From positions 1-64,000 of the IMG/VR virus record IMGVR_UViG_3300037725_000018: 64,000 bases of DNA. The stretch is one strand, 5' to 3'. The position numbers were made by a program, and so were the translations under genes. The notes under the pieces were generated by a model that was given only the letters and a program-made list of their open reading frames with translations, made no database searches and was not told the origin of the DNA. Below, piece after piece: positions 14,778 to 24,047 of the stretch; position 1 is the first letter of the stretch, and each line of letters starts with the position of its first letter.

Positions 14778-16274
14778 GTGCCTAACAAGGAAGCCCCTTT
14801 ATCACAAAGCAAACAGGTTATGTCTTTTGACTGGAGCGATTACCAGAAACGGATCTTCGATTGGGGAATCAACGGGTCCGGAAACGCGGTTGTGGACGCA
14901 AAGGCCGGAAGCGGAAAAACAACCACGCTTATTGAGCTTGCACGTCGAATCAAAGAAGAGCGTGGAGAGGGTGGAGTTTTTGTTGCGTTCAACAAACACA
15001 TCGAGCGCGAACTCTCTGACAAGCTTTCCGATACCGATTTCATTGCAAAGACCGTCCACTCTTGCGGTTTCGGTGCAATCCGCTACGCCGGGTACGACGT
15101 TGACGTAAACTCTGATAAAATCAAAGACATCGTCAACGCCGTTACGTCCGATATGGCGTTCAAGAAAAACAAAAAGACGGTAAAGGCCAACCTTCGAAAC
15201 ATCGTTGACCTTGTTCGGCTCAATCTTGCGGACCCGTCCGATAAAAGCGAAGTTTTGGACGTTGCCCGTCACCACGGAATTTCCATTGAAGAGATTTTCC
15301 CGCTTATCGAAACGGTGATTAACCGTTCAAACAAGATTGCAAAAGAAAACGGGGAAATTGACTTCACCGACATGATTTATCTTCCGGTGAAGTGGAACCT
15401 TTCGATGTACCAAAACAAGTGGGTCTTCGTGGATGAAGCACAGGACCTAAACACTTGCACGCGCCGGGTGATTGACAAGATGCTTCGTCGGGACGGTCGC
15501 GCAATTTTCGTGGGAGATCCCCGTCAAGCCATTTACGGTTTCGCGGGTGCGGATTCGGATTCTTTCGAGCAGATCAAAGAAGAGTTTGAAACAACCGAAC
15601 TTCCGCTAAACATCACCTACCGTTGCCCGAAAAGCCACGTTGAAAACGTGCAACGCATTGTTCCGGAAATCGAGCCCCGTGAAAACGCCCCGGAAGGTAA
15701 AATCATCGAAGACAAGATGGACAGCCTACCGAACATTGCCGAAAGTGGGGATTACGTTTTGTGCCGCACAAACGCTCCGCTTATCCGGAATTGCATCCGT
15801 CTAATCAAGAACGGACAGCCTGCTCACGTGGTCGGACGAAACATCAAGCGGGGCCTTCTTCAAATTGCAAACCGGATTGATTTTGATAACTTCAACGAAA
15901 GCGTTCGTTCTTACTACCAAAGCAAGCGAGAGAAGCTTCTAGAGAACGATACGTCCGAAGAAAAGCTTCGGGCCTTCCGGGATAAGGTAGACGCCATTAA
16001 AACCGTCTACGGCGAATATGACGTTTCCACAAAGCGGGGTCTAAAAAGCAAGATCAAGTCCCTGTTCAAAGAAACGCCCGATTCGGTGAAGCTTATGACC
16101 GCACACAAGGCGAAGGGCCTTGAAAACGACCGGATTATCATCATCCGAACCGATCTTATGCCGCTTCGTTGGAAGGGTCAAAAGAAGTGGCAGGCAGAGC
16201 AGGAGATGAACCTGAAATATACAGCCGAAACTCGCTCTACGGATACGTTAATCTTCCTTCACCCTGAAAACTAA
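14778..16274 (+). CDS. UvrD/Rep-like superfamily 1 helicase
   Basis: AKAGSGKTT, VFVDEAQD, VGDPRQAIYGFAGA, TYRCPKS, TAHKAKGLE and YTAETRS (motif VI). Confidence 0.92.
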   Translation: MPNKEAPLSQSKQVMSFDWSDYQKRIFDWGINGSGNAVVDAKAGSGKTTTLIELARRIKEERGEGGVFVAFNKHIERELSDKLSDTDFIAKTVHSCGFGAIRYAGYDVDVNSDKIKDIVNAVTSDMAFKKNKKTVKANLRNIVDLVRLNLADPSDKSEVLDVARHHGISIEEIFPLIETVINRSNKIAKENGEIDFTDMIYLPVKWNLSMYQNKWVFVDEAQDLNTCTRRVIDKMLRRDGRAIFVGDPRQAIYGFAGADSDSFEQIKEEFETTELPLNITYRCPKSHVENVQRIVPEIEPRENAPEGKIIEDKMDSLPNIAESGDYVLCRTNAPLIRNCIRLIKNGQPAHVVGRNIKRGLLQIANRIDFDNFNESVRSYYQSKREKLLENDTSEEKLRAFRDKVDAIKTVYGEYDVSTKRGLKSKIKSLFKETPDSVKLMTAHKAKGLENDRIIIIRTDLMPLRWKGQKKWQAEQEMNLKYTAETRSTDTLIFLHPEN

Positions 16275-16365
16275 TTACAAGTGTCAGCCGGGGTTGCGGG
16301 TACATCTTGATAGGTGTACCCGCAACTTATATTAGAGACGGTTTTACGTGATACGTCGAACCGCT
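16230..16365 (+). repeat. Diverged direct repeat, copy 1 (helicase tail + hairpin + endonuclease 3' end)
   Basis: Encodes TRSTDTLIFLHPEN* on +; 16291-16365 matches 17487-17561 at 62/75 nt. Confidence 0.9.
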
Positions 16366-17371
16366 CACCAATCTCAGATTGTGTCATATCGGATTCTTCA
16401 AGAAGGTACTTTATCTCCCCGGCTTCTTTTTTTGAAAGCGCAGGTGTCTTAGGTTTTTTCAAATCTGGAATGGGTTGGGGCTTGGAAGGTTTTACACCTT
16501 CATGAATCTTACCAACATTGATTTCAGAAATGGTTTGGCTTTTTACGTCGTAATGTTTAGCAACAGACTTTTGGGTAAACTTGGTATTATTCAAAAGCCA
16601 TTTGATTTCTGAAACTTGCTCTTTGGACAGCTTGTAGGTCTTCTTCGGATCTAAAAAAACTTCTTGGGGCTTACGTGGCTTCACATCCGTATATCTTTTC
16701 CCGGTCTTGATGCAGGATATGGTATAGCTTGTAACGTCGTAGAGATCACCTATGTCCTTTTGAGAAGCATCCGTATTTTCTATAAGCCATTTGGCTTCGG
16801 CAACCTGTTTCTTGGTCATTCCCAATTTATTTGGTTTTGGAATTGATTCGGGTTTTGATGGTTCAACACGTATCCAGTTTCTTTCTTTGATAATATCGCA
16901 AATAGCCTGTGCCGATACTCCGTATTTATTTGCAAGCTGTTTTTGGGTACATTCGGTGTTTTTAACGAGCCATTTGATTTCGGCTACACTCTCTTCATCT
17001 AACAAAGAAAGTGGTGAATCACTACCATAAGGTGTTTGTCCCCCATAGGCGGTTCGAATAATGTTAGTGAGTTGATCAAAAATATAATCATCATCTAGAA
17101 CAAGTTGTTCTAGCTCTTTTGCCTCTTCTAAGGTCAGGTCAGTTGCAAGTTTTCTGCCGTAACATTTCCAACCGTTTTGCTTGCACTTTTTAATCGTAGA
17201 CGATTTGTGTGGATTTACATCGTACCGTAAACTGCTTTCAGAAAAGTGTCTATTCATTCTTCTTCCGGTTCCGCGCCCTACATAAAACGTCTTCGGAACA
17301 AAGTTATTTCGGGGCCGTTCGTGTACTAGAGCATAAACGTAGTATCTTCTATTAGAATCATCCATAGTCAA
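16271..17371 (-). CDS. GIY-YIG (LEM-3-like) endonuclease with four C-terminal HTH repeats
   Basis: YYVYAL...FYVGRG...RMNRH, EEAKELE and LTN; four repeats of K.(V/A).EIKWL...TQ..I...Y.V....IS.I; ATG at 17365. Confidence 0.85.
   Translation of the reverse strand: MTMDDSNRRYYVYALVHERPRNNFVPKTFYVGRGTGRRMNRHFSESSLRYDVNPHKSSTIKKCKQNGWKCYGRKLATDLTLEEAKELEQLVLDDDYIFDQLTNIIRTAYGGQTPYGSDSPLSLLDEESVAEIKWLVKNTECTQKQLANKYGVSAQAICDIIKERNWIRVEPSKPESIPKPNKLGMTKKQVAEAKWLIENTDASQKDIGDLYDVTSYTISCIKTGKRYTDVKPRKPQEVFLDPKKTYKLSKEQVSEIKWLLNNTKFTQKSVAKHYDVKSQTISEINVGKIHEGVKPSKPQPIPDLKKPKTPALSKKEAGEIKYLLEESDMTQSEIGERFDVSRKTVSNISCGYTYQDVPATPADTCN
16291..16328 (+). terminator. 17-bp stem-loop after the helicase stop (terminator or processing element)
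   Basis: gggttgcgggtacatct-tgat-aggtgtacccgcaactt; G-U pairs favour the + strand; U-tract is weak. Confidence 0.6.
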
Positions 17372-17395
17372 GTTCAGTTCTTGTTAATGTTCACA

Positions 17396-17406
17396 TTTAT
17401 ATATAG
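17396..17406 (-). promoter_or_regulatory. Candidate late promoter driving the endonuclease
   Basis: Exact CTATATATAAA, 31 nt upstream of the endonuclease ATG. Confidence 0.55.
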
Positions 17407-17428
17407 TATGATTGCCCGGTTTACTCAC

Positions 17429-17561
17429 ACAAGATCAACCGACACACTCATTCTTCTTCACCCCGAAAATTAATCGGTATTGATTGAAGCTGTGGGCACA
17501 TCTTGATAGGTGTGCCCACAGTTTATATTAGAGACGGTTTTACGGGATACGCCGAGCCGCC
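17429..17561 (+). repeat. Diverged direct repeat, copy 2 (displaced helicase tail + hairpin + endonuclease stub)
   Basis: Encodes TRSTDTLILLHPEN* on +; hairpin at 17487-17524. Confidence 0.9.
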
Positions 17562-17565
17562 TTTT
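17470..17565 (-). pseudogene. 3' remnant of a related endonuclease (last HTH only)
   Basis: KRRLGVSRKTVSNINCGHTYQDVPTASINTD* versus intact ERFDVSRKTVSNISCGYTYQDVPATPADTCN*; preceded by an in-frame TAA, no start codon. Confidence 0.8.
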
Positions 17566-17594
17566 TTACATGCACGGATACGATTTACTCGAAA

Positions 17595-18238
17595 ATGGTC
17601 ATAATTCAAACAAAAGAAGACCTCTCAAAAGAAGAGGTATACCCCGAGCATCATGGGAAAAATGAAATTTGGTTTAAAGATTCGATTAATGGCAATCTTC
17701 GTTTAAGCCAAGGCAAGATTGACCTTTTAAAAGACACCTATATTCAAGTCGATGAAAGAAAAATTTGGGTTTCCGGATGTGACTTCACGTACAGACACAG
17801 GCTTTCAAAATACAAAGGCCAATGGGACCGTTGGGGCATGAGGGTACGAAGAAGCTTCCATAGAAAAGACAGAAGAAAAGCCTTGCCAATTTGCGAACGA
17901 CACTTTCGGCTTCGTCGGTTAGATAAGCAACATAAACAAGCGAAAAAATACGGAAATATTTTAAAGAGTTGGGGTGTCCACTAATGCTTATATTTCTTGA
18001 AACAAATTCAGAGATTATAGAACTTACAAATGTTGGATTCGATTTTTCAAGCGCAGGCGTCTTTTCCTGTTGTAAAGACTATTCCGGAAGGTGTCATTAC
18101 ATGTTTGAACGCCCGATAGGAAATGGCACAATGACCTTCAAAGGAAGTAATATTTACGTGCGTTACCGGGTTAGAAAGTTTTGCAAAGAGGGCATGGGAA
18201 AGTCTGTGCCAATAAAATTTAAAGACTCTGTAAATTGA
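17595..18238 (+). CDS. Two hypothetical proteins (17595-17984, 17984-18238)
   Basis: Coupled ORFs with a TAATG overlap. Confidence 0.65.
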
Positions 18239-23151: not shown

Positions 23152-23985
23152 ATGAACTACATCTACGAAATTCGAAATACAAAAACCGAAAGGTCATACA
23201 TCGGGTCCACCGAAAATTTTCGGAGACGAATGGTTGAACACCGCTCGATGCTTCGAAAAGGTGTCCACTCTTCCCCGTACCTCCAACACTCTTGGAACCA
23301 GTACGGGGAAGAGGCTTTTGTATTTCGGGTATTAGAGCAAGTCCCGGAAACCGAACATCTTCTTCAAATTGAGCAGCAGTGGCTTGACGATGTAAAACCT
23401 TTTCCGTGGGAAAACCCAAAGGGATACAATATAAGCCCGGATGCTATTGGTGGTTACACTTGGGGACCAAAACACCCAAGATACAATGAAATCGTTGAAA
23501 AAATGAAAAAGATCAATTCTGGAGAAAACAACGGGATGTGGGGGAAAGAACATACCGAAGAAACTCTTCAGCTTATGAAAGACCGTGCTGAAGGTCGGTA
23601 TACTCTTGAATGGTTTATCGAACGATATGGTGAGGAAAAAGGAAAACAACGTTATAAAAGTCGTTGTAAACGTCTATCAAACCGTGAATACGACAACCCA
23701 ATGAATCATGAAAAACACAGAAAGAAAATTTCGGAAACACTTCAAGGAAGAAATGTTACTTGGAAAGATAAAATTAGTAAAGGTAGAAAAGGAAAAGGGA
23801 CTGGAAAGGCAAATGTGAACTACAAAGAAATTTCAAAGACAGAACTAAAACAAAAAGTTAAAGAAGAGTTAAAATCAAAAGAATTGGCTGAATATTTTGA
23901 TGTTTCACAAAACACAATTACCCGCAAACTCAAAAAACATTTCGGATGTGGTCTCCGTGAAGCTAGAAAACAGTTTAGACAATGA
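23152..23985 (+). CDS. Free-standing GIY-YIG homing endonuclease with NUMOD3-like motifs and C-terminal HTH
   Basis: YIYEI...SYIGST...RRRM.EH; NGMWGKEHTEET and HRKKISETLQG. Confidence 0.85.
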   Translation: MNYIYEIRNTKTERSYIGSTENFRRRMVEHRSMLRKGVHSSPYLQHSWNQYGEEAFVFRVLEQVPETEHLLQIEQQWLDDVKPFPWENPKGYNISPDAIGGYTWGPKHPRYNEIVEKMKKINSGENNGMWGKEHTEETLQLMKDRAEGRYTLEWFIERYGEEKGKQRYKSRCKRLSNREYDNPMNHEKHRKKISETLQGRNVTWKDKISKGRKGKGTGKANVNYKEISKTELKQKVKEELKSKELAEYFDVSQNTITRKLKKHFGCGLREARKQFRQ

Positions 23986-24019
23986 AAAAAGGGATGAGCC
24001 AAAAGCTCATCCCTTTTTT
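23985..24019. terminator. Bidirectional intrinsic terminator between the endonuclease and MCP
   Basis: aaaaaagggatgagc-caaaa-gctcatccctttttt. Confidence 0.85.
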
Positions 24020-24047
24020 CTTTTTGTGATATGTAAGGTCCTAAACC

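What the first reader, a model, noticed from the sequence alone, without database searches (positions are those of the whole stretch)
16291..17524. Covarying 17-bp hairpin encoded inside the endonuclease coding sequence, present in both repeat copies
Copy 1 (16291-16328) is gggttgcgggtacatct-tgat-aggtgtacccgcaactt. Copy 2 (17487-17524) is aagctgtgggcacatct-tgat-aggtgtgcccacagttt. All nine differences keep pairing: three are double compensatory changes (U-A to C-G twice, C-G to U-A) and three are single changes through G-U. The G-U pairs work only on the + strand, so the structure belongs to the helicase transcript, 16 nt after its stop. Several changes are non-synonymous in the antisense endonuclease frame, suggesting structure was selected over protein. 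Inference: the element gives its host gene a terminator, roadblock or processing signal that also limits antisense interference with the endonuclease mRNA.
Basis: partly seen in the sequence, partly recalled or inferred. Interest (0 to 1): 0.7.

Follow-up and report, generated by a model that had tools for sequence, protein, structure and literature searches.

The report
Endonuclease cassette with terminator-like hairpin
The two hairpins are the near ends of two successive insertions of a selfish endonuclease gene into the tail of a jumbo-phage helicase gene. The hairpin most likely replaces the helicase's own transcription terminator, which the insertion displaced, but no RNA data could be found to test this.

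Summary
The hairpins are real. Both have 17-bp stems, and they are the two most stable uninterrupted hairpins in the 223-kb phage genome. All nine differences between them keep pairing. The framing needs correcting: only copy 1 lies in the live endonuclease gene. Copy 2 sits in a relic about 120 nt upstream of that gene's start.

Related tidal-flat contigs show what the repeat is. A GIY-YIG-like homing-endonuclease cassette is present or absent in otherwise near-identical phages. It inserts about 14 codons before the helicase stop. It brings a synonymously recoded helicase end, the hairpin and the antisense endonuclease gene.

In cassette-free alleles the helicase is followed by a canonical terminator. 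In one cassette-bearing allele that native end and terminator sit displaced behind the cassette. In the window the displaced piece is instead the stump of an older cassette: helicase end, hairpin and 29 endonuclease codons, fused to the old terminator's T-run.

A third hairpin variant adds a fourth compensatory pair, and every non-Watson-Crick pair is G-U on the + strand. The hairpin codes a low-confidence C-terminal tail.

A portable + strand terminator or 3' stem-loop is the best reading (about 0.5). It is unproven: there are only three variants, the U-tract is modest and no RNA run was listed. This is a new variant of known kinds.

The parts
14778..16274 (+). UvrD-like superfamily 1 helicase, the host gene of the cassette. 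By comparison with L059 and L057, its last ~14 codons (about 16230-16274) are supplied by the cassette.
   Evidence: Pfam UvrD-helicase at 3e-22 and PHROG DNA helicase at 3e-94. L059 and L057 differ by 1 mismatch in 695 nt of helicase body, then by 5 synonymous mismatches in the last 45 nt.
16275..16290 (+). 16-nt spacer between the helicase stop and hairpin 1. On the - strand it codes the last residues of the endonuclease.
16291..16328 (+). Hairpin 1 (W1): 17-bp stem, UGAU loop, followed by a U-rich tail. It is overprinted on endonuclease codons ~347-359.
   Evidence: Folds at -28.9 kcal/mol on + and -22.2 on -. Among the top 2 hairpins in the genome.
16271..17365 (-). Free-standing homing endonuclease gene (364 aa): an N-terminal GIY-YIG-like domain plus four three-helix HTH modules. 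Its stop codon overlaps the helicase stop tail to tail.
   Evidence: dN/dS against the L059 allele is 0.14. Presence/absence polymorphism is shown.
17366..17413 (-). Upstream region of the endonuclease gene. The right end of the cassette is at 17413.
   Evidence: The same sequence up to 17413 is found in L059, after which the alleles differ. Contig loose ends at 17413 in runs X4, X5 and X9 carry the native helicase end.
17414..17473 (+). Relic of a helicase 3' end. The last 14 codons and stop are at 17429-17473, with possibly about 5 more degenerate codons before them. It is displaced by the present cassette.
   Evidence: It translates to the helicase C-terminus with one change. It has 14 nt differences from copy 1 and only 8 from the L058-type allele.
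17487..17524 (+). Hairpin 2 (W2), the hairpin of an older cassette generation. It is 13 nt after the relic stop.
   Evidence: Folds at -31.9 kcal/mol on + and -21.8 on -. It is the most stable hairpin in the genome.
17470..17560 (-). Relic of the C-terminal ~29 codons and stop of an older endonuclease gene. It is still in frame, with the same tail-to-tail overlap of stops with the helicase relic.
   Evidence: Own-genome protein search: 64% identity to residues 334-361, E 8e-7, with a 31-aa open frame. DNA repeat at 87% identity.
17562..17567 (+). T-run left from the native helicase terminator. The deletion that removed the older endonuclease ended here. With the small stem before it, it may still act as a terminator.
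   Evidence: Compare L057 and L070, where the canonical stem is followed by T5 and then the same downstream sequence.

Best explanation
SHOWN. The helicase gene carries a mobile homing-endonuclease cassette. In L059 the duplicated helicase segment begins about 14 codons before the helicase stop. The cassette consists of four parts: a synonymously recoded copy of those last helicase codons with a stop, a 16-nt spacer, the 17-bp hairpin, and the endonuclease gene on the opposite strand. The endonuclease's last ~20 codons run through the hairpin and end on the helicase stop. Insertion pushes the native helicase end and its canonical terminator 1.2 kb downstream.

In the window the displaced piece is not the native end. 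It is the stump of an earlier cassette: helicase end, hairpin and 29 endonuclease codons, fused to the native terminator's T-run. The two 'repeat copies' are therefore two generations of the same cassette end.

INFERRED. The hairpin acts in the + strand helicase transcript as a portable Rho-independent terminator or a 3'-end-protecting stem-loop. It would replace the displaced or destroyed native terminator and stop read-through from the + strand gene block from running antisense through the endonuclease gene. It was built inside a substitution-tolerant C-terminal tail of the endonuclease and has been kept by compensatory substitutions.
For: Cassette polymorphism. L057 and L070 are cassette-free: the helicase stop is followed after 34 nt by a canonical terminator (-24.6 kcal/mol plus T5). 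L059-L062 and L071 carry the cassette with the native end and terminator displaced. The helicase body is identical except for 5 synonymous changes in the last 45 nt. All three allele types co-occur in tidal-flat runs.

Relic..

Live gene. dN/dS is 0.14. A GIY-YIG-like fold plus four HTH modules is supported.

Structure. There are three distinct hairpins. All 51 cells pair, 4 pairs change on both sides, and slid controls give 25-59% pairing. Every non-Watson-Crick pair is G-U on the + strand, so the + fold is 7-10 kcal/mol stronger than the - fold. At the stem base the 3' side stays CUU or UUU while the 5' side toggles between A and G. This is as expected if the 3' U's are part of a U-tract.

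Strength and tail. These are the two strongest hairpins in the genome. The tail score is 3.7-4.2 when the basal U's are counted, against 4.7 for the native terminator and a background 95th percentile of 3.75.

Context. The endonuclease is the only sizeable antisense ORF in the + strand block 9.3-24 kb. Hairpin-coded residues fall in a low-confidence tail. Distant orthologues L050 and L064 keep the peptide motif but have no hairpin, so the structure was added on top of existing coding sequence.
Against: There is no RNA evidence of any kind: no RNA run was listed. Only three distinct sequences exist in everything searched, so covariation cannot reach significance: 19 of 500 shuffles match it, and the transitions-only null gives p of about 0.03.

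The U-tract is interrupted (UUAUAUUA). The simple terminator scan does not call either hairpin. Other strong hairpins in this genome have runs of 4-8 T.

In L059-type alleles the native terminator is still present behind the cassette, so the host does not strictly need a new one. Distant cassette-bearing relatives manage without any hairpin.
Confidence: 0.5

Rival explanations
1. The hairpin is a functionless DNA quasi-palindrome. Template switching during replication copies one arm onto the other, which produces 'compensatory' double changes without any selection on RNA.
For: The stems differ at 9 of 34 positions while the adjacent 36 nt differ at only 3. This suggests an elevated, arm-coupled mutation process. 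Only three sequences are available. All changes are transitions, and half of single transitions keep pairing anyway. Distant orthologous cassettes need no hairpin.
Against: Template switching should drive arms to perfect Watson-Crick complementarity on both strands. Instead each hairpin keeps 2-3 G-U pairs, all oriented so that only the + strand pairs (7 of 7 cells, about 4 independent events). Pair 15 is U-G in all three lineages. This mechanism does not explain why a 17-bp palindrome arose exactly 13-16 nt after the replacement stop codon, or why it is the strongest hairpin in the genome.
Confidence: 0.2
2. The hairpin is a + strand RNA element other than a terminator, for example an RNase III or RNase E processing site. 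Alternatively it is a structure that limits duplex formation between the convergent helicase and endonuclease transcripts. No termination would occur at this site.
For: The same structural evidence as for the best explanation applies. The U-tract is weak. A 17-bp stem is longer than most intrinsic terminator stems. Convergent overlapping transcripts are expected, because no - strand terminator follows the endonuclease stop.
Against: There is no direct evidence. The basal U-rich 3' side and the replacement of a displaced canonical terminator fit termination more simply.
Confidence: 0.15
3. The palindrome is a double-stranded DNA site bound by a protein, for example the endonuclease's own HTH modules for autoregulation or immunity, or a phage or host factor.
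For: The endonuclease has four HTH modules. I-TevI is known to act as an autorepressor at an operator (PMC2988022). The top of the stem and most of the loop are almost invariant.
Against: The site lies at the 3' end of the gene, not at a promoter. Mirror-image changes in both arms alter the half-site sequence, which a fixed DNA-binding protein would not tolerate. G-U pairs are mismatched half-sites at the DNA level. The invariant top of the stem is also explained by the conserved peptide motif it encodes.
Confidence: 0.07
4. The structure works in the - strand endonuclease mRNA, for example by pausing ribosomes or stabilising the 3' end.
For: The - strand still folds at about -22 kcal/mol, z about -5.5.
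Against: All wobble positions become A-C mismatches on the - strand. No U-tract follows on the - strand. The hairpin ends 6 codons before the stop, so a 3' end there would give a non-stop mRNA.
Confidence: 0.03

Closest known systems
Mobile endonuclease ORFs (mORFs) that carry a replacement C-terminus of their host gene. Examples are Allomyces macrogynus atp6 and Glomus atp6, atp9, cox2 and nad3 in fungal mitochondria (PMC3630166).
   Same: The endonuclease gene inserts near the 3' end of a host gene and brings an in-frame, mostly synonymously diverged copy of that end. The native end is left as a duplicate behind the insert. In the cassette-bearing allele L059 that displaced copy matches the corresponding sequence of cassette-free relatives.
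   Different: Here the host is a jumbo-phage helicase and the endonuclease is on the opposite strand, not fused in frame. A hairpin is overprinted on the endonuclease's own last codons. The window additionally keeps the stump of an earlier cassette instead of the native end.
Intrinsic terminators inside the coding regions of the phage T4 free-standing endonuclease genes mobE and segF (review PMC2988022).
   Same: A stem-loop with a weak U-tract lies inside a homing-endonuclease coding sequence. It is thought to tune read-through between the endonuclease and neighbouring host genes. About 30% termination was measured for mobE.
   Different: Those terminators lie in the 5' part of the gene and act on the sense transcript. 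Here the hairpin lies in the last codons, is read antisense to the endonuclease, and would terminate the convergent host gene. Function here is not measured.
Free-standing GIY-YIG homing endonucleases of T4-like phages (the Seg family) and intronless homing with co-conversion of flanks (PMC2988022).
   Same: An N-terminal GIY-YIG-type nuclease is joined to C-terminal HTH DNA-binding modules. It is present or absent at one site among close relatives, with a sharp boundary and converted flanking markers. T4 segD is likewise antisense to its neighbours.
   Different: The catalytic domain scores below Pfam's cut-off, and the best structural match is a GIY-YIG restriction enzyme. There are four tandem HTH modules. 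The insertion lies within the end of a gene, not between genes. No cleavage data exist.
Canonical Rho-independent terminators, including the native one after this helicase in cassette-free alleles.
   Same: A GC-rich stem-loop lies just after a stop codon on the sense strand. Basal A/G-U pairs lead into a U-rich tail, as in this genome's A-tract/T-tract terminators.
   Different: The stem is 17 bp and the U-tract is interrupted (UUAUAUUA). The hairpin lies inside a convergent coding sequence, and no mapped 3' end exists.

Membership tests
Rho-independent (intrinsic) terminator | Stable GC-rich stem-loop in the transcript | tested here: met
   Folds at -28.9, -31.9 and -29.7 kcal/mol, with z -6.9 to -9.0. 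These are the strongest hairpins in the genome.
Rho-independent (intrinsic) terminator | Run of U immediately 3' of the stem | tested here: inconclusive
   After the full stem, 4 of 8 bases are T, so the scan's rule of at least 5 of 8 is not met. If the basal A/G-U pairs open, 5-6 of 8 are T. The tail score is then 3.7-4.2, against 4.7 for the native terminator and a background 95th percentile of 3.75.
Rho-independent (intrinsic) terminator | Lies downstream of a gene on the sense strand | tested here: met
   It lies 16 nt (W1, L059) or 13 nt (W2) after the helicase stop or its relic.
Rho-independent (intrinsic) terminator | RNA 3' ends map to the U-tract | not testable with these tools
   No RNA run was listed for this phage.
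Free-standing homing endonuclease cassette (GIY-YIG type) | GIY-YIG catalytic domain | tested here: inconclusive
   A YVY...YVGRG motif is visible. Pfam LEM-3_GIY-YIG scores 24.8 bits against a cut-off of 27. The PDB sequence match to the GIY-YIG protein 9u75 has E 0.94. Foldseek gives the same protein as best hit, with probability 1.00, 87 columns and E 0.025, on a model with pLDDT 62.
Free-standing homing endonuclease cassette (GIY-YIG type) | Presence or absence at one site among near-identical genomes, with sharp boundaries | tested here: met
   L057 and L070 lack the cassette; L059-62, L071 and the window carry it. The helicase body has 1 mismatch in 695 nt. Cassette-free joints and loose ends appear in runs X6 and X7.
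Free-standing homing endonuclease cassette (GIY-YIG type) | The enzyme cleaves the cassette-free allele near the insertion site | not testable with these tools
   This needs a biochemical assay.
mORF-type C-terminal replacement (hybrid host gene) | The insert supplies an in-frame copy of the host gene's end, and the older end is left downstream as a duplicate | tested here: met
   In L059 a recoded end (5 synonymous changes) is followed by the cassette and then the native end with its terminator. In the window the displaced end is at 17429-17473.
Structured RNA supported by covariation | Statistically significant compensatory changes across independent homologues | tested here: inconclusive
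   There are 3 distinct sequences, 4 of 17 pairs with double changes and no broken pair, but 19 of 500 shuffles do as well. The null simulation gives p of about 0.03.
Known RNA families (Rfam) | Match at the gathering score | tested here: not met
   The only match is a chance one to mir-70, at 29 bits against a gathering score of 90.
Quasi-palindrome kept by template switching | Arms tend to perfect Watson-Crick complementarity on both strands | tested here: not met
   Each hairpin has 2-3 G-U pairs, all on the + strand, and one is shared by all three. The sample is small, so this mechanism is weakened, not excluded.

The most novel reading that the evidence does not exclude
A selfish homing-endonuclease cassette carries its own strand-specific transcription terminator, written antisense into the last codons of its own gene. 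When it breaks into the end of a host gene it then supplies three things: a new gene end, a new terminator, and insulation of itself from host read-through. The dual-coding hairpin is kept by compensatory substitutions even where they change amino acids. The window preserves two successive generations of this cassette end, a direct fossil of the invasion, decay and re-invasion cycle in a phage.
Probability: 0.4. Interest if true: 0.6.

Novelty: new variant of a known kind. Interest (0 to 1): 0.45.

Why it matters
If the hairpin does terminate helicase transcripts, the case shows how a selfish endonuclease keeps its cost low when it inserts inside a gene. It would bring the gene's end, a terminator and its own insulation in one package, with the terminator overprinted on its own coding sequence.

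The case also gives a rare, dated-by-divergence record of repeated invasion of one site in an uncultured jumbo phage. All three states (empty, invaded and re-invaded over a relic) co-circulate in one environment. For annotation, it warns that short direct repeats flanking an antisense ORF at a gene's end are insertion footprints, not regulatory duplications.

Tried and rejected
**More hairpin homologues for covariation**
- A 16-mer scan of IMG/VR gave 42 loci. All were chance hits except two contigs identical to the window.
- Helicase-based and endonuclease-based scans of IMG/VR returned only identical or distant loci.
- Both metagenome scans found nothing.
- Cluster members and their contigs gave only the L059-type variant.
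- Laying contigs of eight tidal-flat runs showed the same three alleles and no new hairpin.

**RNA evidence**
- No RNA run was listed.

**Other searches**
- Rfam gave no family.
- A T4-late-promoter-like TATAAAT motif lies upstream of the endonuclease gene but is not enriched in the genome, so it was dropped.
- The sigma-70 and terminator scan gave no more hits than shuffles and did not flag the hairpins.

**Ideas rejected**
- Two like-oriented hairpins as ends of an IS200/IS605-type element: rejected, because L059-type cassettes have only one such hairpin and there is no transposase.
- The ORF simply reading through a pre-existing helicase terminator: rejected, because the hairpin-coded peptide is homologous to the module ends of hairpin-less orthologues.
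- A tandem duplication origin of the repeat: rejected, because the helicase-end relic is closer to another lineage's allele (8 mismatches) than to copy 1 (14 mismatches).

Full report
**The observation.** The window is the first 64 kb of a 223-kb virus record with 43% G+C. Read depth and related contigs place it in tidal-flat metagenomes. A UvrD-like helicase gene ends at 16274 on the + strand. A 364-codon gene on the - strand runs from 17365 to 16271. Its stop codon overlaps the helicase stop tail to tail.

Each has 17 pairs and a UGAU loop. As + strand RNA they fold at -28.9 and -31.9 kcal/mol, and no shuffle folds as well. As - strand RNA they reach only about -22 kcal/mol, because the wobble pairs become A-C mismatches. 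An exhaustive scan of the genome for uninterrupted stems ranks them first and second of all hairpins on either strand. The nine differences are as described: three double changes and three single changes through G-U.

One part of the description is wrong. Copy 2 is not in the endonuclease coding sequence. It lies upstream of that gene's start codon.

**What the repeat is.** The repeat runs from about 16230 to 16364 and from 17429 to 17560. On the + strand, copy 2 still encodes the last 14 helicase residues and a stop, with one amino-acid change but 14 nucleotide changes. On the - strand it encodes, in frame, 29 residues homologous to the endonuclease C-terminus, ending on the relic helicase stop with the same geometry as in copy 1. 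It is therefore a stump containing both convergent gene ends and the hairpin between them.

**Related alleles.** Contigs from the same environment explain this.
- L057 and L070 carry a helicase 94% identical to the window's and no endonuclease. The stop is followed after 34 nt by a canonical terminator (13-bp GC-rich stem, -24.6 kcal/mol, then T5), and the next gene follows.
- L059-L062 and L071 carry the same helicase but also an endonuclease 91% identical to the window's.
- Between L059 and L057 the helicase has one mismatch in 695 nt, then five synonymous mismatches in the last 45 nt.
- Behind the endonuclease gene in L059, directly after the sequence that ends at window 17413, the native last 14 codons and the canonical terminator reappear unchanged.

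The insert is thus a cassette made of a recoded helicase end, the spacer, the hairpin and the antisense endonuclease gene. In L059 the duplicated helicase segment starts about 14 codons before the stop. Contigs of eight runs show that the empty allele, the L059-type allele and the window-type allele co-circulate.

In the window, what lies behind position 17413 is not the native end. It is the stump described above, joined to a T-run and then to the same downstream sequence as in L070. The simplest history has three steps: an earlier cassette invaded; its endonuclease was deleted from within the last DNA-binding module to the native terminator's stem; and the present cassette then re-invaded the same site. 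The helicase-end relic resembles the L058 lineage (8 mismatches) more than copy 1 (14 mismatches), so the older cassette came from a different background.

**The gene.** The protein has a YVY...YVGRG motif. Its Pfam GIY-YIG match is just below threshold. Its best sequence and structure matches are to the same GIY-YIG restriction enzyme, with Foldseek probability 1.00 over 87 columns on a modest model. It also has four three-helix HTH modules. Between the window and L059 its dN/dS is 0.14, so it is a working gene.

Orthologues sit convergently behind the helicase in much more distant phages. L050 and L064/L065 have helicases about 60% identical and endonucleases 42-45% identical. Their cassette-free relative L063 shows the same presence/absence pattern. 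Those distant copies lie just after the helicase stop, with no duplication and no hairpin.

**The hairpin as a structure.** L059-type cassettes give a third hairpin sequence. Compared with copy 1 it turns pair 3 from G-C to A-U, turns pair 1 from G-U to A-U, and changes one loop base. Across the three sequences all 51 cells pair, four pairs change on both sides and two change on one side. Sliding the partner columns drops pairing to 25-59%.

All seven non-Watson-Crick cells are G-U on the + strand. At the stem base the 3' side is always CUU or UUU, while the 5' side alternates between A and G. This is the pattern expected if those U's begin a U-tract.

The limits are plain. Three sequences cannot give significance: 19 of 500 shuffles match the observed value. 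Nine random transitions keep all pairs in 2.7% of trials.

The hairpin-coded residues (about 347-359) follow the last predicted helix and have pLDDT below 50. The motif they carry is shared with hairpin-less orthologues. The structure was therefore written into a tolerant but genuine coding tail. The claim that structure overrode protein rests mainly on one double change between the two live genes that alters two residues.

**Function.** The cassette separates the helicase from its terminator (L059 type) or sits where that terminator has been destroyed (the window). The endonuclease is the only sizeable antisense ORF in a + strand block from 9.3 to 24 kb. A strong + strand hairpin 16 nt after the new stop, leading into UUAUAUUA, is what a substitute terminator and antisense insulator would look like.

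Its tail score is 3.7-4.2 when the basal U's are counted. The native terminator scores 4.7 and the background 95th percentile is 3.75 (the scoring recursion was recalled from memory). The simple scan does not call it, and other strong hairpins in the genome have longer T-runs. If it terminates, it is probably leaky. No RNA data could be found. I put the terminator or 3'-end reading at about 0.5, a functionless quasi-palindrome at 0.2, another + strand RNA role at 0.15, and a protein-binding site or a - strand role lower.

**Comparison with known systems.** Endonuclease ORFs that bring a replacement C-terminus and leave the native one as a downstream duplicate are known from fungal mitochondria (PMC3630166). 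T4 mobE and segF contain intrinsic terminators within their coding regions, and T4 segD is antisense to its neighbours (PMC2988022). The present case combines these in a jumbo phage. It adds an antisense, overprinted, covarying hairpin and a two-generation footprint. It is a new variant of known kinds, of moderate interest.

Noticed in passing
window 17531-17567 (+): Just after hairpin 2, a smaller stem formed by the endonuclease relic runs straight into the T6 left from the native terminator (fold). The deletion that removed the older endonuclease may have created a makeshift terminator. A similar small stem without a T-run follows hairpin 1 at 16335-16367.
   Followed up: partly
L055 2354-3043 and 4001-4744: In a 359-kb viral contig, a distant helicase homologue matches in two pieces separated by about 950 nt. 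This could be an intron, an intein or another endonuclease insertion inside the gene.
   Followed up: no
L064 4985-5001 and L065 1545-1554: A run of G between the helicase stop and the convergent endonuclease stop differs in length between contigs of the same phage (about 17 versus 10 G). It may be a slippage-prone tract or an assembly artefact.
   Followed up: no
window 23984-24020: A strong symmetric hairpin with an A-run on one side and a T-run on the other lies where the + strand gene block meets a - strand block. It looks like a bidirectional terminator. It shows what native terminators of this phage look like.
   Followed up: partly
window 16569-16987 (-): Three 47-nt direct repeats spaced 183-189 nt apart correspond to the tandem HTH modules of the endonuclease. 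The DNA-binding array therefore arose by internal duplication.
   Followed up: partly
window 17568-17600 versus L070 3685-3725: The gene after the locus starts at an upstream ATG in the cassette-free allele (136 aa call). In the window that ATG is out of frame, so the gene starts at 17595 (129 aa). The scar of the older deletion may have trimmed the neighbour's start.
   Followed up: no
L058 3848-3898: A cassette-free allele with a helicase 87% identical has neither a terminator nor a hairpin after the helicase. It also lacks the gene that follows the locus in the window. The next gene starts 50 nt after the stop.
   Followed up: partly
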